From: Octopus sinensis
Taxonomy: Eukaryota
Assembly: GCF_006345805.1 (NCBI RefSeq)
Contig: NC_043004.1
Coordinates: 46,872,001-46,936,000 of the forward strand
Direction: 5' to 3'
DNA length: 64,000 nucleotides
Of this stretch, positions 2,990 to 52,830 are shown one piece after another. The notes under the pieces were generated by a model, which did not search any database, was not told where the DNA came from, and saw only the letters and a program-made list of their open reading frames with translations. Numbering within the stretch: the stretch's first letter is position 1; each line of letters begins with the position of its first letter. Both the position numbers and the translations under genes were made by a program.

Positions 2990-3195
2990 ATAGTTAATCT
3001 AAACATGAAAGCACAAAGAGAAAACACAAGAATGCGAGGACATGGAGCAAATATAGTATTATTGGAAGGATAGGAAGAAGGAGGGTTTAACGTTTCGAGC
3101 GGATCTCTTCGTCGGAAACATAGGAGAAGGAAAGATCCAAAGGGAAGACAGAGGAAAAAAATGCCAACGGTACACACGCGGTCACATTTTGAATC
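2990..3195 (-). mobile_element. PLE-type tail, family A, with HHR-like motif at 3086-3118 (core mutated to CCGACGA)
   Basis: Reverse-complement homolog of 14804-15018. Confidence 0.65.
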
Positions 3196-13389: not shown

Positions 13390-13693
13390 TATATATTAGA
13401 AGAAATGAGGTAATCAGAAGATCGGATGGTTCATATTTATAGATATTTATTTATATATTACATTTTTTACATATATATATCATATCATTCAGATCATATC
13501 ATTCGGATTATTAGCGCTTTCTCCCATTCCAGTGGGGTTTTCAAATCAAATTGAAAACCCCACTGGAATGGGAGAAAGCGCTAATAATCCAAATGATATG
13601 ATCTGAATGATATGATATATATATGTAAAAAATGTAATATATAAATAAATATCTATAAATATGAACCATCCGATCTTCTGATTACCTCATTTC

Positions 13694-13705
<12 letters not shown>
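13390..13705. repeat. Near-perfect palindrome, ~155-bp arms, 6-nt spacer ATCAAA (13545-13550); probably a PLE tail
   Basis: Direct reading shows one mismatch. Each arm starts with the HHR-like TTGAAAA-CCCA(ctggaa)TGGG-AGAAA-GCGC-TA. Confidence 0.9.
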
Positions 13706-14803: not shown

Positions 14804-15018
14804 ATTCAAAATGTGACCGCGTGTGTATCGTTGACGATTTTTCCTCCGTATTCTCTTCCTTGGATCTTTCCTTTTCCTATGTTTCTGACGAAGAGCACCG
14901 CTCGAAACGTTAAATCCGGCTTCTTTCTTTCCTTTCCTTAGCGTCCAATAAAACTATACTTGTTCCACGTCCTCGCGTTGACGTGCTTTCTCTTTGTGTG
15001 TTCATGTTTGGATTAACT
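14804..15018 (+). mobile_element. PLE-type tail, family A, HHR-like motif at 14882-14914
   Basis: TTT-CTGACGA-A-GAGC(acc)GCTC-GAAA-CGT-T-AAA. Confidence 0.7.
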
Positions 15019-19984: not shown

Positions 19985-20263
19985 AGGGTAGAAATTGATA
20001 TTTATCAATTAAGACCAGTGGTCTAGCATATTAAAAAAGAATCCGAAGATTAAAATATTTATATATACCAATTAAGGACTGAACACGAAAAGTGGACAGT
20101 CAACATGCTAGATATAGACGTCAAATCGCCATTCACCACAAAGATTTATTGCTATGGTTTTGTGTTGAGTTTGATCTGAGAACATAATCTTTTGTGGTGA
20201 ATGGCGATTTGACGTCTATATCTAGCATGTTGACTGTCCACTTTTCGTGTTCAGTCCTTAATT

Positions 20264-20272
<9 letters not shown>
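19985..20272. repeat. PLE-type tail fragment with inverted duplication (arms 20061-20145 and 20187-20272, ~41-bp spacer)
   Basis: Arms are reverse complements except for a 1-nt indel. Confidence 0.8.
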
Positions 20273-20294
<22 letters not shown>

Positions 20295-21967: not shown

Positions 21968-23744
21968 GCGTTATTACTACAAGTTAATATCTCAGCTGTA
22001 ATGGGACTCTAATAAATGTATTTATATTTAATGGAAAAATTATATATTTGGTATTAATTTGTTCCTCAATTGGTTTTTCAGGCTGGCTACTTCATAAATT
22101 CTTATACAAATTTTATCCGTATACTTCAATAAAAAATTAAACTGAAATATATTTAGTGCTGAATTATTCCTACTATACATATACACGTGTGACGGAGATG
22201 GACTTGTTAATTCTGAGTTTTTCATGGATATATAAGTGCGAACATTTGTATATGCTCTATTAGATACGTTTGTTGTTTGCTTGGTTTCGATGCTTATATT
22301 TATATGTTCTGATTATATCGTTCTGACTGTTGGAGAGTATTTTATACATGCTGATCAGGAAATCGTTAATGATATGCGACTAAATCCGTTTCTAAAAGAT
22401 ACCCTCCATGTTTCATTCCCTCGCTTTCGGTGACGTGTATATTTATTGAAGTAGTTTGACTTAAGAGTTCCATTACTGCGTGAAGCATTTACTTATAGTA
22501 ATAGGTCTTGTTATAATTAATGTATTTATATTTAAAAGAAATATATACTTTGTATTATTTTTTCTAAATTGTTTTTTTTTGCGTTGGCTACTTAATAATT
22601 TTTTATATAGATTTTATCCTCATATTCTATATGTGTGTGTGTGTTTGTATATGTGTGTATGTGTATGGGCTTACAGATAGATAGATATACATAAACGTAC
22701 ATAAAGATATTTATGTATATATATAGACATAGAGAGAGAGAGCCCGAGTAAGGAATAGATTGATACGTGTGCACGTACACAACCATACCCAGACACATAT
22801 ACACACACTCATGCACACACGCGCACACATATATGTGTTAGTGTGTGTGCGTGAGTGTGTATGACTAAGAGAAAATGGATTGGACAGCATTCTTTATCTC
22901 AAATCATTACAATTGTTTCCACGCATCGTTATGGATTTTGTAGATTGGTGATATGATATAACTAGCATATTATGCAATCACTCATATCAATCAACGATGT
23001 AAATTGTGTTTCTTGAGGTGATGATTTTTCAGTAATTACTACATTAGATCATATACTCCGTACAAATATGAGTACCCAAACGCAGCATGCTATTTTAAGC
23101 AATCCACAGACAAATCTGGGTGTTTCAATCGTTGTTGTCAGTGTGTAACTGCTATTCTTTAGTATCACCTGTCCATGTTCGAATGGAAGTCTGAAATTTA
23201 AATGATGAGAATCAGATGTCTTTCATTTTGTCATTTCTTTCAGTAGGTAATGACATTTCAGCATATATACATTCAATGCATCGTGTTTATCTAGAAGGTA
23301 ATGGAAAAGAAAATACCTTAGTTTCATCGTCAAAAACCTTTAACAAATGTGTTCCAAGTTCAAATTCGGTAGGTGTCGGCAAACTTTTCATACTTCCAGA
23401 AACAGGTCGAGGAATATGATTTAAATGGTGGAAGAATATAATCGAGTATACACCTTCCCGAAATGTGAAACTTGCTGCCTATATAAGATATCATTCATAT
23501 GATTCTTAGGATGCGTTTTGAATTACTTCTCATAATTAATATTGTAGCGTAAACTGCGAATGTGAGCAAAGCACAAATATTACGAGGATGTAGGTTTACA
23601 CAAAGGGCATTGACTTTAGATAAAACTTTAGGAATCATCAAGGACAATATATGTGTGATTTTTTATAAGAATAAACAAGAAATAAGGCAAATGATCTAAG
23701 ATAAGAGAGAGAAGAAATGGGGATGATAATAGTTGATATTTGTT

Positions 23745-24338
23745 TTTCGAGAGCATTGATCACAATGTCTGGTCGGTTGGAGTCACTTTTTCTCTCTGTT
23801 TGTAATGGTAAGATTGAAAGGATGTTGACGCCCTCCCCATTTACTGCATATTCTGGATGGTGCCTGTACCACATATCATGGGATTTAATTTTGTAGTGTT
23901 TACAATTATTCCAGTGGATGCACTTCCCTAATCTGTCATGTCTTATGAGGTACTCCTTTTCAGCGAGGACTGGTAAACCAGAAATAACATGATTAATTCT
24001 CTGTGAAATTTCCGTAAATTCTGCACGAGGGGTCAGATCCGTCTTTAAAGACGTTTGCATGGTAGTTTCTGGCAGGTAATCTCCGATCTTGCGCTGCAAT
24101 AAAAAAAAACCTTGTGTTTCCCCTTTCAGACATATCCCTTGTAGCCATTGGTGTGTTAGATCAATATCTGGCTTGAACAGGCAGTTTAGCGTATGTCCCA
24201 TGTAGGAGTGTACCTTTCCAGTTGTCCTCGATATTATTCATGCAAGCCATCTTTACATTTTCTTTGATGTGTTTTGCATCAGTGATAAGTTTGTCGCTAT
24301 TTGGGTGTCTTTTGTTCATTCTTACTGCTACATTTTAG
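23745..24338 (-). mobile_element. R4/Dong-like RLE LINE remnant (CCHC region)
   Basis: HQWLQG..LKGETQGF; LAEKEYLIRHDRLGKCIHW; WYRHHPE; RPDIVI. Confidence 0.85.
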
Positions 24339-25605: not shown

Positions 25606-25650
<45 letters not shown>

Positions 25651-25667
25651 TAATAATAATAATAATG
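25499..25667. repeat. (CTA)n(TAA)n microsatellite
   Basis: Direct reading. Confidence 0.95.
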
Positions 25668-26845
25668 ATATACAAAACAACCACAATTGGACTGGCAAAA
25701 TATATTGAAATAACGAATGATTCGATGCTAAAGCTCGTGGAAAATCACGAGAGACGAAAGAAGCTTCATTCTATCATAAAGGAAAACAAAAAATTTGCTA
25801 TTGATCTCGTGCAGGATACCCAAACAGAACAACCCGAGGGATGTACGGCAACTATTGTTGCAAAGAAGGTGAAAAAAATGGCAACGAAAAAAGTGCACGA
25901 GCAATTGGCTGATAGGTGGGAGGAGAAACCTCTGCACGGCAAATATGTGGCCCGCAGCAAACAAGCTGATGTTGACCAGAAGCAAACCCATCAGTGGCTA
26001 CGGAGCTCAGGGCTAAGAGCAGAGAGCGAAGGTTTCATCCTGGCCGCTCAAGATCAAAGCCTATTAACCCGGAACTACCAGGCCAATGTAATGAAAAATG
26101 GAGCAGACCCAAAATGCCGATTCTGCAATGACATGATTGAAACAGTGGACCACCTAATCTCTGGATGTAAAGTCTTAGCACCAGTGGAGTATAAATTAAG
26201 ACATGACAGAGTTGCCAAATATCTACACTGGCTAATAAGTCGGCATTACAATATCAAAATTGCCGACAAGTGGTATAATCACCACCCTGAAGCTGTAACT
26301 GAAGGAGAAAGTGTAACGATTCTGTGGGACTTTCCAGTACATACAGACCGAACCATCAAAGCCAATAAACCAGATATTGTTGTGAAAGACAAAAATAATA
26401 AAGTTTGCTTATTGATTGACATGAGCATCCCCTGTGATCATAATATCTCGGCGAAAGAGTTTGACAAGCTCAGAAAATATAAAGACCTGCTCATTGAAAT
26501 TGAGAAAATGTGGCATCTCAAGGCGGTTACAATACCAGTGATCGTAGGAGCACTAGGAATGATCAAGAAGGGAACCGAAAATTATATGAGAATGATCCCT
26601 TGCTTACCATCCCTGCAAGAAGTGCAAAAGATTGTCTTAACTGGTACGTCACACGTATTGAGAAGAGCATTGTCGATGTGAGAATTATTACTACCCATGT
26701 ATTTTAATTTAACTTAAAAAAAAAATTAACGAACTATTGAGTTTAGTTTAATGGCCTACCAATGTATACTATGAGTTTCTTTGCCCTAGGAGTCGGGAAG
26801 ACACTCGGCAAGAAACGGAAGCAAATTTGAAAGAAGAAGAAAAAA
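25668..26845 (+). mobile_element. 5'-truncated R4/Dong-like LINE with an uninterrupted ~337-codon C-terminal ORF (CCHC + PD-(D/E)xK RLE) and 3' UTR
   Basis: ORF 25647..26681: CRFC..MIETVDHLISGC zinc knuckle, RHD, KPDIV...LIDMSIP...KYKDL. Flanked by (TAA)n on both sides. Confidence 0.95.
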
Positions 26846-26862
26846 TAATAATAATAATAATA

Positions 26863-26936
<74 letters not shown>

Positions 26937-26945
26937 AACAACAAC

Positions 26946-26979
<34 letters not shown>

Positions 26980-30139: not shown

Positions 30140-32520
30140 ACACTATTTCAATATTTTGTAAATACAAGTTCAAGTTAATACTAAGAAAGTGATACCTTAT
30201 GTCATATAAATCATTAGAAGAACGAGATAATTGGTTTGATGCTCACGACTGATCGTTGACCGATTCATAAAGATAGAAAATATTTAACATGCTCAAATGA
30301 AAATCAAAGCAACGTAATAATAATCTATAGTCTTCTCATCCAATTTCATTTGAAATACAATTTATTTTGAATAATCTAGTTTATGCATACTGGGAGAAAA
30401 TAAGCACTTCGTAAAAATATATGCATTTGATGACTTATTTCTATGAATGAATTCAGAAATAAAGGTAAAAAATTAACATTTACAGATATGGCGAGTAGCA
30501 ATATAATTTTAAACTATATAAAAGCTCTAATCAGAAAGAAAAAAAAAACATAAAGAAGCATGAGCAGAATTTAGGCTAGTTGAAATGTTTGTGACATATT
30601 TCAACTGCGAAAAGACAAATACATTGCAGCTACCGTGGAAAATAAATCTGTTATAGTAGATAGGTGTGAAAAAGACCGATTCCTTTAGTGTCGCCCTCTA
30701 TTAGGAATCTCAGACAGCGATTTTTCAAGCTATTTTGGCTCTTGTCAAAGCGATGTACCTCAGAGAGGCAACTCAATGAACTTAGAAAGCTATAGCTTTA
30801 TGTATAATCCGGTCAGTACATTGACTGATTTGCGCTAGTCGATCGCTCGATCGAGGTAAACAGCAATGTATTGATTAGATGATACATCAGGCTAGAGCTT
30901 TCTAAGTTTGTTCAGAGATGCCTCTCTTAGTTACCAAAATAGCTTGAGGCGTCAATGTCTGAGATTCCTAATAGAGAGTGACACTGAACGAACCGATATT
31001 TTCACACCCTTTTACCACAAGAAAGATTTATTCTCCGTGGTAACTACAGAGTATTTGCCTTTTAGCAATTGAAATGTCAGAAACTTTTCAACTAGCTTAC
31101 ATTCTACTCATACCTAAACAGTACTTCGCGCTAACGCTTCTCTTTTTAAAGAAGCATTTTTTTTTACACAAAGTACTTGCCAAACCAACATTTCACTAAA
31201 ACCGATTTGTGAACTGCTTTTGATGCCCTAAAACACGAATAAAACGTCTGATACAATAGAGTTCCGGTTTACTAAAAGCAACTAAAACATATTGGCTTGG
31301 AAGATATCAAGTTGTGATTTCATAATTTTTCATGTTTTGGCAGCAATTACCTATATATTACAAATTATATCATTGATAATTTCTAGATGGCAAATTTACT
31401 AATGTATTTTGCATCCGAATTGTGTACCAAAGTGCACCCTGAAAATGCATGTTATGGTTTTAGACGATGATATACCAAGATACAATTAAATATACGAACG
31501 TTTCAGTAGCCACATTTGGAATACTTTTTATGATCTTGTTACATCAGGTTTCACTTTATCCTGAATGACATTGTAGTCAGGTTATATAATTTCTGCAAAT
31601 TGAAACATTGCTTTGGTGTACTTATTGTTTTTTTTTATAACACTTTCTATCGAAAGTGTAATATGACTCTTTCGAGATACAGGGCCACCTTTCCAAACAA
31701 ACGATATCACATTTTTGTTATATGAAATGAATATTTCCACAATATCCTAATATAAGGCACAAAAAGAATAAATCTTTCTTGTGGTAAAAGGTGACAAGAA
31801 CCAAAATAGCTTGAAAAATCGCTGTCTGAGATTCCTAATAGAGAGTGACACTAAAGGCACCGGTCTTTTTCACACCTATTTACCAAAGGCACTGATCGGA
31901 TTATACATATTCAGAGATGCCAGACACAACAGAATATCCTAATATAAATTATATCATATACGAAAACTGTAGCCTTAATGGGTACAGTGTTCCAGTTGAA
32001 ATATTAATATTATTTGTTTCATTATCATTAACTATAAATCCAGTTCCCTGTTAATTATAATAATGTGCATGCTGGGTTTTCTGATTTATGTTTTGGAGTT
32101 TTATATCTTATATATTGAGTTACAACCATCATTCGATCTTCAGCAGCGCCGCTGTACTTTATGTTTATTCATTAAAATAAATTACCTATACACACTAGCA
32201 CAACACACACACACACACAAACGAAAACAAATGCATGTATTTTTCTAAAGTGTTTTTTTCCTCTCAGTATGCATAAACTAGATTTTCCAACATAAATTGT
32301 ATTTCAAATAAAATTGGATGTGAAGACTATAGATTATTGTTACGTTGTTTTGATTTTCTTTTGGGCATGTTAAATGTTTTCCATCTTTATGAGACGGTCA
32401 CTGATCAGCTGTGAGCATCAAACCACTTATCTCGTTCTACTAATGATTTATATGACAAGCTATCGCTTTCATATTATTAACTTGAAAGCTTTGTTACTTT
32501 TCTTATATTGAAAACCATAA
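30140..32520. repeat. Large degenerate foldback (arms ~30140-30650 and ~31950-32520)
   Basis: For example ctatagtcttctcatccaatttcatttgaaatacaattt (30.3 kb) versus aaattgtatttcaaataaaattggatgtgaagactatag (32.3 kb); similarity continues over hundreds of bp. Confidence 0.8.
30661..31008. mobile_element. Palindromic MITE-like element
   Basis: Inverted ends 30661-30738 and 30934-31008, plus internal inverted segments (gaacttagaaagctatagc / gctagagctttctaagtt). Confidence 0.6.
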
Positions 32521-34318: not shown

Positions 34319-34744
34319 TTATAATAATGACGCAGAACTTATAGTTTATGAGGTGTTAGATTTTGGCGTATTCCAGCGTGAGCCAGAAAAGAACTGAAAA
34401 TAAGATGTTTCAAAATAAAATATACATGATCATATTTTTGATACCATTCGCTTGTGCAATTTTTCATATAATGTATGGAAATGAATTCAAATCTAAAGAT
34501 GTTAAAAAGGGAACTGGCTAAGATTTCAAACTAAGTGAGCGGATCCATAAACTCAGGATGATGACGATAAGTGTCTTTCAGTTATAATGTAATAAATATT
34601 ATTCCTCGTTTACATTGTGTGTTCTTCAAATACATCAATTCTCAGTGAACCAACAGGATTATTTGCATATATATATGCATGTACGTATGTATGTATATAT
34701 ACATGCATACATACATAATACACACACACACCACACACACACAT

Positions 34745-34780
<36 letters not shown>

Positions 34781-35250
34781 TAGCTGTCTACAGGCCGCCT
34801 CTTGCCGACCCCCAGGACGATGCTCATTTACTCGAAGCGATAAGATTCGTTTCAGCTTCGCATGACTGTTTGGTACTAGGAGACTTCAACGCTCCCACGA
34901 TCGATTGGCCCGCATCAATTTGTACAACATCTTCCCGGTTCGGCCAGGCTCTCCTTGACGTGGCTGAAGATTGTTTTCTATCGCAACATGTTGAATATCC
35001 TACAAGGCATCGGTCTGGGCAGCAGCCATCTATGCTAGATCTGGTATTCTCCCGCTATCCAAGATCAGTGTCAGACGTATCTGTGTGCGCCCCTCTTGCC
35101 AAGAGTGATCATGCGGTCCTGAAGTTCGTCATGCACACAACTTTTTCTACGCCCACGACTACTTCGCTGCCACGTAGAGTCTTCTCTGCAATTAATCTTG
35201 AAATTCTAACCGAGGCTTCCGCGCTTCTGGACTGGACTCACCCAACAAGA
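34781..35250 (+). mobile_element. AP-endonuclease (APE) domain fragment of a CR1/L2-group LINE, open frame
   Basis: AVYRPP, LVLGDFNAPTIDW, LSQHVEYPTRHRSGQQPSMLDLVFS, SDH; no stop codons over ~155 codons; GC about 50% by eye. Confidence 0.9.
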
Positions 35251-35849
35251 ACTCACTACTTGAACAAAATTTGACTTAAACAAAACTTGACTTAAACAGG
35301 CTTCGAATAATCCTATCAGGTGGTGCTATTAAGTTAGACATGGTCTGGACCAATCTTTGGTCGAAACATATCTACGTTATTCTAAGTTATATATATAGGG
35401 TGTATATGTTTGTATTTCAATGATGTTTTAGTCTGTTTATCCATCTACGCCTAGTATTGCGCCTTATTCATATTACCCATGCAAATATATGCAAAATTCA
35501 CAAAGATATTGTCCTACGATGTCAGTACAAGTACAGGAAATAATTATTGGTATTTCCAATTCAGTTAATCACAGGCGTATTTCATGCGATTACGTCACTA
35601 ATAGTTATGTAATCAATGACCTTCTTTCATTAGGACCACATAATTCGTTTGTACTGAAACACAGACAGATGTATATGTTAAGGTCTGTTCCAAGAGACGG
35701 ATATAGACTCCATGTAGTATATCTTAACATCAAACAAATCATTTATATTTATAAGCATGATGGATCTGAACCATGTATTGTTACTTTTGAAATAACTGAA
35801 ATGATTTTCAAATTTCGGCAGATGTCCAGAAGGTTTGGGAGAAGGGGAA

Positions 35850-44889: not shown

Positions 44890-44929
<40 letters not shown>

Positions 44930-45015
44930 TATTAGAGACAAAACCACTATTTTGCAAAACAAACAAGGAAAGACTTAATCAATACATAAAATTTTAATAA
45001 TAGTCAAAAAAACCG

Positions 45016-45058
45016 CCACTACAATCGTTTCTTGTCTTGATCGACAATCTTCAGGTGG
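45016..45058 (-). ncRNA. Minimal type I hammerhead ribozyme motif (inverted copy)
   Basis: Exact reverse complement of 45724-45766. Confidence 0.85.
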
Positions 45059-45062
45059 ACTT

Positions 45063-45278
45063 CCAATCAGTACTCTGGTGGTTAGATATATAGATGACGT
45101 TTTCGATTTATTAAAGATGCATCCACATCACCATAGAGATGAAGCTCGGTACCTGAGTAAGTCTCGAAGAAAAACAAGACCAGCCGCTGGTATATCCCCA
45201 CATTGTGTCATCGCCAATCTGGTAAATGCGATGTGGTAAGGCGGCACTTAGGGCCCTCCATGCTCCCCAGACGGCCAG
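45063..45278 (-). pseudogene. AGPAT5: Inverted partial duplicate of the AGPAT5-like fragment (LAVWGAW to DW)
   Basis: Reverse complement of 45500-45719 with a few single-base deletions; ORF 45111..45329 reads LAVWGAWRALSAALPHRIYQIGDDTMWG. Confidence 0.88.
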
Positions 45279-45418
45279 CCTCTCCTCTTCATTGACGTTC
45301 AATAACAACTCAATTTCCTCTCTTCTCATCTTTGTCTGTCTATCTGTTTATCTATCTATCTATCTAACTCGGTTTCCCCACCTATCTTTTTGGGCTTCTC
45401 CGACTGGAGTGGACAATT

Positions 45419-45719
45419 ATGCTCTCAGTGGTCATTAATCTACACCATTTCAGATGGATTGTTCCAGGCTTCGTGATTGTGGGGACGGCACCCTGTTATC
45501 TGGCCGTCTGGGGAGCATGGAGGGCCCTAAGTGCCGCCTTACCACATCGCATTTACCAGATTGGCGATGACACAATGTGGGGCATATACCAGCGGCTGGT
45601 CTTGTTTTTCTTCGAGACTTACTCAGGTACCGAGCTTCATCTCTATGGTGATGTGGATGCACTCTTTAATAAATCCGAAAAACGTCATCTATATATCTAA
45701 CCACCAGAGTACTGATTGG
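45419..45719 (+). pseudogene. AGPAT5: Truncated, apparently intronless copy of the N-terminal ~100 codons of a 1-acylglycerol-3-phosphate O-acyltransferase 5-like gene
   Basis: Translation MLSVVINLHHFRWIVPGFVIVGTAPCYLAVWGAWRALSAALPHRIYQIGDDTMWGIYQRLVLFFFETYSGTELHLYGDVDALFNKS, then after a +1 A in the run at 45678-45682 (E)NVIYISNHQSTDW. This closely matches the vertebrate AGPAT5 N-terminus as I recall it (GTAPTY..WG.WR.LSA.LP.R.YQ..DD....YQ..VLFFFE.Y.G...LYGD...KENIIY.ANHQSTVDW). Homology stops at the HX4D motif and runs straight into repeat sequence. Confidence 0.9.
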
Positions 45720-45723
45720 AAGT

Positions 45724-45766
45724 CCACCTGAAGATTGTCGATCAAGACAAGAAACGATTGTAGTGG
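45724..45766 (+). ncRNA. Minimal type I hammerhead ribozyme motif
   Basis: CCAC-CTGAAGA-TTGTC(gatcaa)GACAA-GAAA-C(GATT)G-TA-GTGG: stem I CCAC/GTGG, intact CUGANGA and GAAA core, 5-bp stem II, short self-complementary stem III, GUA cleavage triplet (cut after 45762). Confidence 0.85.
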
Positions 45767-45938
45767 CGGTTTTTTTGACTATTTATTAAAATTTTATGTA
45801 TTGATTAAGTCTTTCCTTGTTTGTTTTGCAAAATAGTGGTTTTGTCTCTAATAATATTTTATAATATTTTACTATTAAATTGGATTTAATCCTAGATCTG
45901 ATTTTTTCCCTGTAAATTTGGATTTATTCCCTAATATT

Positions 45939-45990
<52 letters not shown>

Positions 45991-47276
45991 GTATATATAA
46001 ACATACATACATAATACATACATACATACATACATACATACATACATACATACATACATGCATAACTTTTCCGACTAGATCGGTATTCAAAATTACTATA
46101 TATTGAAATAGGGATTTCTGATTCTAATATGGAAATACGCTACATAGAATCACATATTCTTCGCTTCATTCAACAATTTTCATCGCATACAACTTTTACT
46201 ACAAACTTTTAAAACTATTTTGTCCAACGTATATATTGACATTTAATTTGGCAATGGAATCATTAATTTTCTTTTATTTGTACCATTGTACTCTGAATTG
46301 TCTGCGTAAATCGAATTTGGTTGTTTGAAGACTTTTTCTTTTCCCGGCAATTGACTAAACAGTCAGAAGTGGATACGATATTTACTCTAGCTATTCGTAA
46401 ATCTTTACATTATCACCTTTCTTTTCCCTCATCTTTCAGTGATATTTCATGTAAACAAATTCACTTTATTTCTTTCACCTATTCTTGTTAATATGATATA
46501 TTTATTTTCTAATTTTTTTCTTATTAGTTTTATCTGTTGTGTGACCTAGTACATTCTCTTCTCATATCTTTCCTTACACCCGTCTTCTTGTCATACTTCT
46601 ACCAGTTCTCCTTGATCTTCACCTCCTTTAGCTTCTTAAACATTTCTTATGCTTCTTATCCGTGCACGTTTTAAATTTTCTTTGTTTATTCTACCGTTGA
46701 TATTTATCGTCTCCATCAATTTCAACTACTTCATTTCCGTTGATTTCTTGTCTGTTTTTTTCGTGATGTATGCAGATATTTATTTATCTGATCCTTTTCA
46801 CATATATCTCTATCTCTTTGTCAATTTATTTTTTAATCGTATGTCGCTCTGATTTTATTAGTTATATAAACGAAACCTGATTATTGATCTGTATTATGCT
46901 TTTTACATCATTGTTCGTATTTTAATTTTTTTTATTTCAACAAGAAGATTTATTTATTCGATATATTATTTCTACCTTTAGTGCAGTCATATTTGTAAAT
47001 ATTCTCTTAATCTATTTTTACTGCTTTTAACATTTTTCCATCATAATATATGATGGGTCTATGAGCTTGAAGAGACCATGGATGTGTAAATTAAATGTTT
47101 GTAAGCAGTTAAATTTTGAACATTCAGTCTGCAATACAACCACGAATATATGATACAAAACGCGATGCAGTAAGTTCCATATCACCTAATTCAGTTTTGA
47201 TTTAGTTTGTACTCCTTCACCACAATTTTGTATTTCCAATTCAATTTCCTGTTTTTAATCATACAATCTTAGAAAT

Positions 47277-50814: not shown

Positions 50815-52830
50815 TGAGGAACTGGATGGGAAAGAAAAACCGTGTCAGATGCTGAAGAAAGTAAAAGATTTTGGTTAAAAATATGGTCTCGGGAGAAACA
50901 ACACGAAACTGAAGTAGAGTGGTTAAAGTCCCTCAAAGAGGAAAGTGGGGAGTATGAGCCGGAGGAATTGATAATAACTAAGGGGATGATTAGAGATCAG
51001 TGCAGGAAAATTCCTAACTAGAAAGCGCCAGAATCCAGGTGAGATTCATGACTTTTGACTTCAATACTTGACAGCTTTGCACAGGAGAATTACAAGAAAG
51101 CTGGACTAAATACTGAGTAGTGAAATTCAATTACCGGCTTGGATGCAAAAGGAAGAAGGGTACTATGCCAGAAGGACCCAAGTAAAGGGAATGCGGCTGC
51201 AAATTTCCGACCAATATCTCGTTTGCCACTGATGTGGAACCTGATGACGGGCATTATATCAGACAGCACCTATAAGTACCTAGAAAGGAACGATCTGCTG
51301 ACAATAGAACAAAATGGGTGTAGACGTAAGGTCAGAGGAACGAAGGATCACTTACTAATGGATGTCTATTCTGGCTGATGGCAAGAAGAGACAAAAATTT
51401 GGCGATGGCATGGGTGGACTACATGGAAGCATATGGTATGACCCCACACACATGGATTATTGAATGCCTTAAACTATTTAATGTCTCACACAATACCCTG
51501 AACTGATTCAAAACTCAATGACAATGTGGTGAACTGAACTCACAACATGGGGAGTTAATCTGAGAGAGGTAAATATCAAAAGAGGAATTTGTCAAGGGGA
51601 CACTCTGTCACCTCTTATTTGTTGTCTGTATTCTGCCAGTAACGAGTGTTTTAAGAATGATGCCTGTGGGACACATGCTAGGCAGGATGAAAGTAAACAA
51701 TCTGTTGTTTATGGATGACCTAAAGCTATTCGCAAAGACGGAGAAAGAAATGTAGAGTTTGACGGAAACTGTGCAGATGATTAGCAAATATATTGGCGTG
51801 GAATTTGGGATCGAGAAATTTGGTGTAATGAACCACAAAAGGGAGGAAATCACAAAAATCTATGGGATCAAGCTGGAAAGTGGTGAAACAATAAGGGACG
51901 TAGGAGAGGAAGGATTAATTACCTGGGTATCATTTAAAGAGAGAAGATGAATGAACACAAGATGAAAGAAATGTACAGAAAAGAGTATTTTAGGAGATTT
52001 CGGCTTGTGCTCCAATCGAAACTAAATGACCGCTATAAGATTAGGGGAATTAACACGTGGGCCGTTGCTTTGGGGAGATATGGGGCAGAAATAATATTTT
52101 GGAAGAAGCGTGAATTACAAGAGATAGACCGGAGAACACATAAATTAATGACAATGAACAAGAATCTACACCCCAAGAGTAATTTGTCAAGATTGTATGT
52201 AAAGAGAAGGAAGAGAAGACGGGAGTAGTGTGCTGTGAAGTTTGTGTGAAGGGGAAAGAGAATAGCCTGGCTTGTGAAGGGGAGTAAAGAAGAAATTATT
52301 GAAGCAGTGAAAATGCACGGTACCTTAAATGTTAGCGAAGCCGTAGATCTAACACAATTTAAGAAGGACCAGAAAGAGATGAAGAAAATTTGTCAGGAAA
52401 AGAAAATGCACAGTCAGTTCTTGAAGAATAAAGATGAGATTGATTGGAATAGAAACTGGCAATAGCTTCAGAAAGGAGACGTAAAACAATCCACTGGAGC
52501 ATTAGTGTCTAGCGCTCAAGAACAAGCTCTCAGAACAAACTAATCCAAATATCACAGTTTAGGATTTGCTGTCAGAATGAAGAAATTATAAGCCTTATTG
52601 TTAGTGACAGCTGTAAGCTCGAACGACGCGAATACAAATTAGACACGACAATGTGACTAGATATGCCCACTGGCTTTTGTGCGGTAAAGCAAACCTCGAG
52701 AGAGCCAATCAACGGTATTAACACAAGCCAGAGGGACGAATGGGAAACGAACGTTACAAAATACTCTAGGATTTTAACTTGTAGTGCGACTAAGTCATAG
52801 AGGAGGCGAGACAACCAGATATCGTGCTCA
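50813..52830 (+). mobile_element. Decayed R4/Dong-like LINE including the RT domain
   Basis: Starts right after (TAA)n. DAEESKRFW; [24 protein letters not shown]; [17 protein letters not shown]; RGICQGDTLSP; LFMDDLKLF; continues into a broken CCHC/RLE. Confidence 0.92.

What the first reader, a model, noticed from the sequence alone, without database searches (positions are those of the whole stretch)
44920..45863. Host AGPAT5 mRNA 5' end fused to a hammerhead-bearing Penelope-type tail and inverted-duplicated
Seen: a short 5' leader plus ATG and ~100 uninterrupted AGPAT5-like codons (45419-45719) stop at the catalytic NHQST-D motif. A complete type I HHR starts 4 nt later (45724-45766), followed by an AT-rich tail. 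A 5'-truncated copy of the same unit lies inverted upstream. Known: PLEs carry minimal type I HHRs and often insert with an inverted truncated copy, whereas ordinary LINE retrocopies keep the mRNA 3' end and poly(A). This copy instead keeps the 5' end and has no poly(A). Inference: either PLE reverse transcriptase copied its own tail through the HHR and switched template onto AGPAT5 mRNA, or an AGPAT5 transcript spliced into an intronic PLE tail and the chimera was mobilised. Either would be a ribozyme-associated route for capturing gene 5' ends, which I do not know to be described in cephalopods.
Basis: partly seen in the sequence, partly recalled or inferred. Interest (0 to 1): 0.9.

Follow-up and report, generated by a model that had tools for sequence, protein, structure and literature searches.

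The report
Spliced AGPAT5 exons fused to ribozyme tail
A cephalopod genome carries an intron-less copy of the first two exons of the lipid-synthesis gene AGPAT5, joined exactly at the exon-2 splice donor to a short hammerhead-motif tail and inserted as a head-to-head inverted pair in a TA repeat; this looks like a Penelope-type retroelement trapping and copying a host gene's 5' end, an unusual but probably non-functional relic.

Summary
The inverted repeat is real: 44920-45278 (-) mirrors 45500-45863 (+) around a 221-nt loop that holds a leader and the ATG. The arms differ only by five single-base indels.

The coding part is AGPAT5, 85% identical to the Argonauta hians protein.
- The ORF is frameshifted (A5 run, 45678-45682).
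- Homology ends at 45714, not 45719.

In Argonauta, and at the same phase in the coral Porites, 45714 is the last base of exon 2. Intron 1 is also absent. The copy is therefore exons 1+2 of a spliced mRNA, joined to foreign sequence at the exon-2 donor. This favours splicing into the tail and argues against a reverse-transcriptase template switch.

The hammerhead motif (45724-45766) fits a type I descriptor that found nothing in 300 shuffles. It has U10.1-A11.1 instead of G-C and no Rfam hit, but Rfam also misses a canonical minimal hammerhead at 14881-14915.

The inverted 5'-truncated copy, the TA-repeat target, the one-sided 3' extension and the end about 100 nt past the cut site match published Penelope-like insertions. 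The tail's copy number and its autonomous element could not be tested.

Verdict: partly supported, a new variant of known host-exon capture, moderate interest.

The parts
44894..44923 (.). Left (TA)n microsatellite that abuts the unit. It is the presumed insertion target, and its last 4 nt overlap the inverted repeat.
   Evidence: Sequence read; repeats.
44920..45278 (-). Inverted, 5'-truncated copy. It holds the reverse complement of the tail (44920-45067), of AGPAT5 exon 2 (45068-45144) and of the 3' part of exon 1 (45145-45278). It lacks the leader, the first 81 nt of the CDS and the 77-nt 3' extension.
   Evidence: about 98% identical to 45500-45863, and all differences are single-base indels.
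45016..45058 (-). Hammerhead-type motif in the inverted copy.
   Evidence: Descriptor scan; pattern search.
45279..45418 (+). 140-nt leader, presumed to be the AGPAT5 5' UTR. It contains a (CTAT)n run and forms the first part of the loop between the arms. Its 5' end coincides with the junction to the inverted copy.
   Evidence: There is no detectable similarity to the upstream regions of Argonauta or L001 beyond microsatellite, so its identity as a UTR is inferred.
45419..45634 (+). AGPAT5 exon 1 equivalent (Met1-Glu72).
   Evidence: 79% DNA identity to Argonauta exon 1. It ends where L001 and Argonauta have the …AG|GTAA donor.
45635..45714 (+). AGPAT5 exon 2 equivalent, joined to exon 1 without an intron. 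An extra A in the run 45678-45682 shifts the frame. The last base, 45714, equals the last base of Argonauta exon 2 (…AACCACCAGAGTACTG|gtaagt).
   Evidence: 60/80 identity, 19/20 at the 3' end. The same phase-1 intron occurs in Porites.
45715..45863 (+). Foreign AT-rich tail shared by both arms. It is not AGPAT5 exon 3 and is not found in the Argonauta AGPAT5 locus.
   Evidence: Shuffle-controlled DNA and protein alignments; BLASTN against L004.
45724..45766 (+). Type I minimal hammerhead-shaped motif: CCAC / CUGAAGA / UUGUC-GAUCAA-GACAA / GAAA / C-GAUU-G / UA|GUGG. The predicted cut lies between 45762 and 45763.
   Evidence: Descriptor: 0 hits in 300 dinucleotide shuffles of the window. The dimer MFE is the double-hammerhead fold. 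No Rfam hit. The 10.1-11.1 pair is U-A.
45864..45940 (+). 77-nt extension present only beside the direct copy, running up to the right (TA)n. It contains two copies of TTGGATTTA. It is either the one-sided PLE 'tail' extension or target DNA.
   Evidence: The same 9-mer class closes the independent HHR element at 15008-15016.
45943..46063 (.). Right (TA)n followed by (CATA)n microsatellite.
   Evidence: The Rfam 'mir-297' hits here are low-complexity artefacts.

Best explanation
The unit is a chimeric processed retrocopy.

A transcript of the cephalopod AGPAT5 gene was spliced normally from exon 1 to exon 2. Its exon-2 donor was then spliced to an acceptor lying just upstream of the hammerhead motif of a Penelope-like element, or of a non-autonomous hammerhead element. 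That element most plausibly sits in sense orientation in intron 2 or downstream.

The element's reverse transcriptase recognised its own 3' module on this hybrid RNA and started copying about 100-180 nt downstream of the ribozyme. It therefore copied only what lay upstream: the hammerhead, exon 2, exon 1 and the leader.

Insertion into a (TA)n microsatellite was primed on both DNA strands, or the first cDNA snapped back on itself. This gave one full copy and one inverted 5'-truncated copy placed head to head.

Shown here: intron 1 is absent; the junction sits exactly at the exon-2 donor; the tail is foreign; the hammerhead-shaped motif is present; the inverted architecture and the TA-repeat flanks are present.

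Inferred: the tail is PLE-derived; an acceptor was used; a PLE enzyme did the copying.

The product encodes at most a 103-residue fragment lacking the NHX4D aspartate at the right spacing. It is probably a non-functional relic.
For: - Intron 1 is missing. L001 (a second cephalopod) reads …GGCACAGAG|gtaaac where the window runs straight on. Argonauta has a 4.8-kb intron there. More than 100 genomic ORF fragments in the representative library stop at query residues 73-75.
- The junction is on the exon-2 donor. Argonauta exon 2 ends …AACCACCAGAGTACTG|gtaagt and exon 3 starts cag|TTGACTGG. The window matches 19/20 nt up to 45714 and then diverges. Porites has the same phase-1 intron.
- The tail resembles exon 3 no more than shuffles do.
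- No other AGPAT5 exon is present in the 64 kb.
- Hammerhead descriptor: 0 hits in 300 shuffles. The real window has this motif in both arms plus an independent canonical minimal hammerhead at 14881-14915. The dimer MFE gives the double-hammerhead fold with an 8-bp intermolecular helix III.
- PLE hallmarks from the literature are met:
  - an inverted 5'-truncated copy at the 5' end, a one-sided extension and a (TA)n target bias (PMC8557442);
  - paired minimal hammerheads 100-700 bp apart on opposite strands, and in D. virilis Penelope an intron acceptor at the 5' end of helix I (PMC4209133);
  - both DNA strands cut and extended, with RT starting internally 85-92 nt 3' of the ribozyme cut (PMC11167929). 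Here the distance is 101 nt, and 106 nt in the independent element at 14808-15017.
- There is precedent for PLEs moving host genes in trans (PMC3846280).
Against: - No RT or GIY-YIG ORF, and no second copy of the tail, occurs in the window.
- The tail was not found in the 5.8-billion-protein collection by six-frame peptides or in metagenome contigs. Neither collection is suited to cephalopod non-coding DNA, so copy number remains unknown.
- The motif lacks the G10.1-C11.1 pair and the bulged base that characterise PLE minimal hammerheads (PMC4209133). It has no Rfam hit.
- The extension is 77 nt, against the usual 30-40 nt.
- The five bases after the junction happen to read 'D W'. If they came from exon 3 with a 3-nt deletion, the junction would lie 6 nt further on and would not be at a splice site.
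- Two unrelated palindromes flanked by (TA)n in the same window show that inverted duplication next to TA repeats is not specific to this unit.
Confidence: 0.55

Rival explanations
1. The retrocopy is the same chimeric, spliced product, but the tail is not Penelope-derived. It would be an alternative terminal exon of AGPAT5 or a piece of some other repeat. The hammerhead-shaped motif would be fortuitous or inactive, and another reverse transcriptase, such as an APE-type LINE of the kind present in the window, made the copy with a snap-back.
For: - No hammerhead hit in Rfam.
- The 10.1-11.1 pair is U-A and there is no bulge.
- No PLE ORF is in the window, whereas APE-LINE fragments are.
- The tail is an orphan in every search.
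Against: - The descriptor gives 0 hits in 300 shuffled windows, so a chance motif inside a given 230-nt tail is of the order of 1e-5.
- Rfam also misses the canonical minimal hammerhead at 14881-14915, so its silence is uninformative.
- From general knowledge, LINE 5' inversions (twin priming) invert a different segment rather than duplicating the same one.
- The TA-repeat target, the one-sided extension and the ~100-nt distance from cut site to 3' end all fit PLEs.
Confidence: 0.17
2. Template switch: the reader's first route. A PLE reverse transcriptase copied its own 3' end through the hammerhead and then jumped onto a mature AGPAT5 mRNA. It happened to land at or within a few bases of the exon 2/3 junction.
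For: - PLE literature invokes template jumps and self-priming (PMC3846280).
- The bases ATTGGA after 45714 could be read as exon-3 sequence (GAYTGGA) with a 3-nt deletion, which would put the break 6 nt inside exon 3.
Against: - The break coincides to the base with a conserved phase-1 donor. For a random landing site on a ~1.1-kb CDS this is a coincidence of about 1e-3.
- The alternative reading needs an unexplained 3-nt deletion exactly at the exon junction, removing a Val that all compared AGPAT5 proteins keep.
- The switch is not at the ribozyme cut site (45762/45763), where a cleaved template would end.
Confidence: 0.07
3. The retrocopy itself is real, but the inverted partner arose later at the DNA level or is an assembly artefact. 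Possible causes are fold-back repair or replication template switching near the cruciform-prone (TA)n, a MITE-like hairpin process, or chimeric long reads.
For: - The arms differ only by single-base indels, mostly in short runs, and by no substitutions. This is the error profile of long-read consensus.
- Two other near-perfect palindromes flanked by (TA)n lie at 13390-13705 and 20055-20278.
Against: - From general knowledge, missed-adapter palindromes have no 221-nt unique loop and would not sit 45 kb inside a contig.
- The geometry is exactly that reported for PLE insertions: the inverted copy is 5'-truncated, head to head, and lacks the 3' extension.
- Independent cDNAs with RT slippage would also give indel-only differences.
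Confidence: 0.15
4. This is the native AGPAT5 5' end in a lineage that lost intron 1, and the tail is simply intron 2.
For: The window's own species could not be searched for a second AGPAT5 locus.
Against: - The sequence after 45714 starts ATTGGA, not GT.
- No downstream exon lies within 18 kb, or anywhere in the window.
- The frame is broken in both arms.
- The unit is bracketed by (TA)n like an insertion.
- Intron 1 is conserved from coral to cephalopods.
Confidence: 0.03

Closest known systems
Penelope-like element insertions (pLTR with minimal hammerhead, inverted 5'-truncated copy, one-sided 'tail'); Craig et al. 2021 PMC8557442, Cervera & de la Pena 2014 PMC4209133, Frangieh et al. 2024 PMC11167929
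   Same: - Head-to-head inverted 5'-truncated copy.
- AT-rich/(TA)n target.
- An extension on one side only.
- A type I minimal hammerhead on each arm, about 700 bp apart on opposite strands.
- The 3' end lies about 100 nt past the predicted ribozyme cut.
- The ribozyme is copied uncleaved.
   Different: - There is no RT/GIY-YIG ORF. The body is host mRNA.
- The hammerhead has U10.1-A11.1 and no bulged base.
- The extension is 77 nt rather than 30-40 nt.
- The link between the tail and an autonomous PLE is unproven.
Penelope-mediated mobilisation of host genes in trans in Adineta vaga (Arkhipova et al. 2013, PMC3846280)
   Same: A host gene sequence carried with PLE terminal sequences to a new site, with an inverted terminal copy.
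   Different: - In the rotifer, whole intron-containing genes sit between two direct pLTRs.
- Here only exons 1-2 are present, the introns are removed, PLE-like sequence lies on the 3' side only, and the fusion is at a splice donor.
SVA_F1 / MAST2 exon trapping in hominids (Hancks et al. 2009; summarised in PMC10681720)
   Same: The first exon(s) of a host gene were joined by splicing to an acceptor inside a non-autonomous retroelement. The hybrid RNA was then retrotransposed. This is the same logic of 5'-exon capture.
   Different: - SVA is moved by LINE-1, ends in poly(A), has target-site duplications and founded an active subfamily.
- Here the presumed enzyme is PLE-type, there is no poly(A), an inverted duplicate is present, and only one copy is known.
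Ordinary LINE-mediated processed pseudogene
   Same: It is intron-less and derived from mRNA.
   Different: - It keeps the 5' end instead of the 3' end and has no poly(A).
- It ends in a foreign tail.
- It has an inverted duplicate rather than a simple 5' truncation or a twin-priming inversion.

Membership tests
Hammerhead ribozyme, type I minimal (PLE-type) | Core boxes CUGANGA … GAAA … UH in type I order | tested here: met
   CUGAAGA at 45728-45734, GAAA at 45751-45754, U-A|G at 45761-45763.
Hammerhead ribozyme, type I minimal (PLE-type) | Helices I and II formed by flanking and internal complementary bases | tested here: met
   Helix I is CCAC/GUGG (4 bp). Helix II is UUGUC/GACAA (5 bp, 6-nt loop). 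The monomer MFE keeps both helices. The descriptor gave 0 hits in 300 shuffles.
Hammerhead ribozyme, type I minimal (PLE-type) | Highly conserved G10.1-C11.1 pair, and an unpaired base between positions 9 and 10.1 (PMC4209133) | tested here: not met
   The pair is U10.1-A11.1 and there is no bulge (with strictGC finds only the 14881-14915 motif).
Hammerhead ribozyme, type I minimal (PLE-type) | Short palindromic helix III/loop 3 that allows a dimeric active form | tested here: met
   ACGAUUGU is self-complementary if G.U pairs are allowed. The cofold MFE of two copies (-21.4 kcal/mol) is the double-hammerhead fold.
Hammerhead ribozyme, type I minimal (PLE-type) | Covariance-model match (Rfam Hammerhead families) | tested here: inconclusive
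   No hit at E<=10. The canonical minimal hammerhead at 14881-14915 is also missed.
Hammerhead ribozyme, type I minimal (PLE-type) | Compensatory changes among family members; self-cleavage | not testable with these tools
   The only two copies are the identical arms. No wet assay is available.
Penelope-like element insertion | ORF with telomerase-like RT and GIY-YIG endonuclease | tested here: not met
   No such ORF is in the unit. Pfam hits among the ten ORFs tested (nine of the longer window ORFs plus the AGPAT5 fragment) are APE-LINE types only. At most this is a product made in trans.
Penelope-like element insertion | Inverted 5'-truncated copy adjacent to the 5' end | tested here: met
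Penelope-like element insertion | Optional extension ('tail') at one end only | tested here: inconclusive
   77 nt (45864-45940) lie only beside the direct copy. This is longer than the published 30-40 bp and could be target DNA.
Penelope-like element insertion | AT-rich or microsatellite target | tested here: met
   (TA)n lies on both sides.
Penelope-like element insertion | Terminal sequence shared with an autonomous element of the same genome | not testable with these tools
   No cephalopod genome can be searched by DNA. The indirect searches were empty.
Processed retrocopy | Lacks introns at positions occupied in the orthologous gene | tested here: met
   Intron 1 is absent.
Processed retrocopy | 3' poly(A) and target-site duplication | tested here: not met
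   There is no A-run. The flanks are (TA)n, so any duplication cannot be read.
Exon-trapping chimeric retroelement (SVA_F1-like) | Host part ends exactly at a canonical splice donor | tested here: met
   45714 equals the last base of exon 2 in Argonauta. Porites has the same intron.
Exon-trapping chimeric retroelement (SVA_F1-like) | Element part begins at an acceptor inside the element; the hybrid founds further copies | not testable with these tools
   The source element is unknown. No further copy is in the window.

The most novel reading that the evidence does not exclude
A cephalopod Penelope-type family carries a working splice acceptor just upstream of its hammerhead. Through it the family would repeatedly trap the 5' exons of genes it sits in. 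Because its reverse transcriptase starts internally and primes on both DNA strands, it would disperse those exons as long perfect hairpins (here a 360-bp stem). Once transcribed, the hairpins would give double-stranded RNA against the parent gene, that is, substrates for small-RNA or ADAR pathways. That would be a systematic, ribozyme-marked route from host exons to regulatory hairpin loci.
Probability: 0.06. Interest if true: 0.8.

Novelty: new variant of a known kind. Interest (0 to 1): 0.45.

Why it matters
Penelope-like elements are the least understood major class of retrotransposons, and almost all mechanistic knowledge comes from one in-vitro system.

A natural product in which about 150-230 nt of hammerhead-bearing 3' sequence was enough to carry spliced host exons would support three ideas from an independent lineage:
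- the cis-acting signal is a short 3' module;
- reverse transcription starts internally, downstream of the ribozyme;
- the uncleaved RNA is the template.

It would also add PLEs to the short list of retroelements that capture host 5' exons by splicing, so far exemplified by SVA/MAST2.

For the host, the locus is most likely a dead fragment. Its only plausible activity would be as a hairpin RNA.

Tried and rejected
- Rfam, at E<=10 on 5 kb and on 111 nt: no hammerhead. A control on the canonical minimal hammerhead at 14881-14915 was also negative, so Rfam cannot decide the question.
- Tail as degenerate AGPAT5 exon 3. tblastn extended alignments to 45791. Shuffle-controlled tests showed no signal: protein score 27 against a shuffle mean of 27.5, and DNA scores at the shuffle mean.
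- Tail inside the Argonauta AGPAT5 locus, including intron 2: nothing.
- Similarity of 45730-45747 to L001 918-935 (17/18) and to the 'EVQKIVL' end of the LINE ORF at about 26625: not above shuffles.
- Other tail copies:
  - within the window: none;
  - six-frame tail peptides against 5.8 billion proteins: none;
  - two exact-pattern scans of metagenome contigs: none.
- Exact look-ups of the window's ORFs in the assembly collection: not on record, so the source contig and species could not be recovered.
- Hammerhead descriptor on loci L001-L004: no hits.
- Shared 3' motif TTGGATTWA between the extension and element 14808-15017: 6 hits in the window against 3.2 expected, which is only weak support.
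- Intron retention: rejected because the base after 45714 is A, not GT.
- NAGNAG alternative acceptor as an explanation for the missing Val: rejected because Argonauta exon 3 starts cag|TTG.
Full report
**The observation**

44920-45278 is the reverse complement of 45500-45863. The two are separated by a 221-nt unique loop, 45279-45499. A three-way alignment shows that the arms differ at five single-base indels and at no substitution.

The ORF from the ATG at 45419 translates to 93 residues and then meets TAA at 45698. The NHQST codons lie in another frame. The cause is an A5 run at 45678-45682, which is A4 in the left arm. The left arm in turn has three other one-base deletions in the coding part. 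Taking the in-frame variant at each site gives MLSVV…LYGDVDALFNKSENVIYISNHQST.

Indel-only differences fit either long-read consensus error or slippage in two independent cDNAs. The sequence alone cannot separate these.

**What the coding part is**

- A full HMMER scan of 1.84 billion representatives found 193 hits. The named ones are 1-acyl-sn-glycerol-3-phosphate acyltransferase epsilon, that is AGPAT5.
- A later search recovered the Argonauta hians protein (P0176) and a second cephalopod sequence (P0177). They are 85% and 84% identical to the window fragment. The next named relatives, gastropods, are about 51% identical.
- Exon-1 DNA is 79% identical to Argonauta and 72% to the second species.
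- The window therefore comes from a coleoid cephalopod, nearer to octopods. The species could not be recovered.

**It is RNA-derived**

- The second cephalopod's genomic contig L001 reads …GGCACAGAG|gtaaac after Glu72. The Argonauta gene (L004) has a 4.8-kb intron at the same place. Coral and sea-urchin genes do too.
- More than a hundred genomic ORF fragments stop at residues 73-75.
- The window runs straight across this point.
- No other AGPAT5 exon exists anywhere in the 64 kb.

**Where the homology ends**

This is the key result.

- Argonauta exon 2 ends …TCTAACCACCAGAGTACTG|gtaagt. Exon 3 begins …cccgcag|TTGACTGGATAGTG, so the Val codon of NHQST-V-DW is split in phase 1.
- The coral Porites lutea has the identical intron, …CATCAAAGCTCAG|gtagta … acag|TTGATTGG. 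The position is therefore ancient, although the sea urchin has lost it.
- The window matches Argonauta at 19 of the last 20 exon-2 bases up to 45714. It then reads ATTGGAAGTCCACC….
It lacks the Val that every compared AGPAT5 keeps.
- Everything after it is no more similar to exon 3 than shuffled sequence, at the protein level or the DNA level.
- The base after the junction is not GT, so this is not intron retention.
- The tail is absent from the Argonauta locus, including intron 2.

A fusion exactly at a conserved donor is what splicing into a foreign acceptor predicts. A reverse-transcriptase jump would hit it by chance about once in a thousand.

A residual caveat is that ATTGGA resembles exon-3 bases 4-9. 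That reading needs a 3-nt deletion precisely at the exon junction, and I judge it much less likely.

**The hammerhead**

- By eye, and by a descriptor I wrote (core boxes, helices I and II of at least 4 bp, a 0-3 bp helix III, UH), the motif 45724-45766 qualifies. So does its mirror at 45016-45058.
- The same descriptor found nothing in 300 dinucleotide shuffles of the whole window. The descriptor's ranges were set after seeing the motif, so the true chance level is somewhat higher. It remains very small for one 230-nt stretch.
- Two copies cofold into the double-hammerhead with an 8-bp intermolecular helix III. This is the mode proposed for metazoan minimal hammerheads (PMC4209133).
- Against membership: the 10.1-11.1 pair is U-A, not the 'highly conserved' G-C, and there is no bulged base.
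- Rfam reports nothing. It is equally blind to a textbook minimal hammerhead elsewhere in the window, so its silence carries no weight.

**Independent hammerhead elements in the same window**

- The descriptor also found GUUU-CUGACGA-A-GAGC·ACC·GCUC-GAAA-CGUU|AAAU at 14881-14915. It has the bulge, the G-C pair and the ACGU palindrome.
- It lies in a ~210-nt element (14808-15017) that abuts (TA)n on both sides. A decayed copy, 80% identical, lies at 2990-3192 on the other strand.
- That element ends 106 nt after its predicted cut. The AGPAT5 tail shared by both arms ends 101 nt after its own.
- In the one PLE studied in vitro, reverse transcription starts 85-92 nt after the cut (PMC11167929).
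- The two families share no alignable sequence beyond a TTGGATTWA 9-mer near their 3' ends, which is only weakly significant.

**Fit to Penelope-like insertions**

Published descriptions match the unit point by point:
- Dual minimal hammerheads 100-700 bp apart on opposite strands (PMC4209133).
- Cleavage and extension of both DNA strands, internal initiation, and no need for ribozyme cleavage (PMC11167929).
- In D. virilis Penelope, an element intron whose acceptor maps to the 5' end of helix I. This is a ready-made acceptor at the place where, 9 nt upstream of helix I, the AGPAT5 exon is joined here.

Because both sides of the predicted cut were copied, the template RNA was uncleaved. The ribozyme marks the element but played no demonstrable part in the capture.

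**What is missing**

- No RT/GIY-YIG ORF is in the window. The recognisable reverse-transcriptase-related fragments are APE-type LINE pieces.
- The tail has no second copy in the window.
- It was not found by six-frame peptides in the protein collection or by two metagenome pattern scans. None of these collections is suited to cephalopod non-coding DNA.
- The PLE identity of the tail therefore rests on the motif and the architecture.

**A caution**

The window holds two other near-perfect palindromes bracketed by (TA)n, at 13390-13705 and 20055-20278. Some general process, or some assembly behaviour, makes hairpins next to TA repeats in this genome. The inverted copy here could in principle be secondary. 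That would not affect the conclusion about the spliced chimeric retrocopy.

**Comparison with what is known**

- PLEs moving host genes in trans are documented in the rotifer Adineta vaga. Those are whole, intron-containing genes between two pLTRs (PMC3846280).
- Capture of a host first exon by splicing into a retroelement, followed by retrotransposition, is documented for SVA_F1/MAST2 (PMC10681720).
- Hammerheads and PLEs are already reported in cephalopod genomes (PMC6962438; PMC8557442).
- The present case combines these: spliced host 5' exons, the donor-to-element junction, and a PLE-type insertion signature.
- I rate it a new variant of a known kind.

**Verdict**

The locus is probably non-functional. 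Interest is 0.45.

Noticed in passing
window 14808-15017 (+), hammerhead at 14881-14915; second copy at 2990-3192 (-): A ~210-nt element carries a canonical minimal type I hammerhead (bulged A, G10.1-C11.1, ACGU palindrome). It abuts (TA)n and ends 106 nt past the predicted cut. The second copy is 80% identical, has a mutated core (CCGACGA) and has more 5' sequence. It looks like a 5'-truncating non-autonomous PLE or retrozyme-type family. Rfam does not detect it.
   Followed up: partly
window 13390-13705 and 20055-20278: Two unrelated near-perfect palindromes, each flanked by TA repeats and single-copy in the window. The first has 155-nt arms with a 6-nt loop; the second has 95-nt arms with a 34-nt loop. 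They could be MITE-like elements, snap-back retrocopies or an assembly effect; this was not resolved.
   Followed up: partly
window 44920-45278 versus 45500-45863: All differences between the arms are single-base indels, mostly in short runs, and there are no substitutions. This suggests uncorrected long-read errors in this assembly. Apparent frameshifts elsewhere in the window should be read with that in mind.
   Followed up: partly
window 25647-26681 (+), 34615-35274 (+), 23638-24201 (-), 51947-52228 (+): These ORFs look like fragments of APE-type LINEs, but only the first two have Pfam support: zf-RVT (20.4 bits, below the 27.5-bit gathering threshold) and Exo_endo_phos_2. 23638-24201 and 51947-52228 gave no Pfam hit. 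LINE 3' ends run into (AAT)n/(GAT)n tails near 26850-26960. No Penelope-type ORF was seen.
   Followed up: partly
window 30200-30429 and 32228-32457: 230-nt inverted repeats, 88% complementary and 1.8 kb apart. This may be a DNA transposon or another inverted retroelement pair.
   Followed up: no
window 45943-46063: The Rfam 'mir-297', 'mir-1277' and 'mir-3149' matches here are (TA)n/(CATA)n microsatellite, all far below their gathering scores.
   Followed up: yes
L004 (Argonauta hians AGPAT5), L002 (Porites lutea), L003 (Lytechinus): The phase-1 intron that splits the Val codon of NHQS(T/S)-V-DW is shared by an octopod and a coral but is absent in a sea urchin. Intron 1, after residue 72, is shared by all three.
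   Followed up: yes
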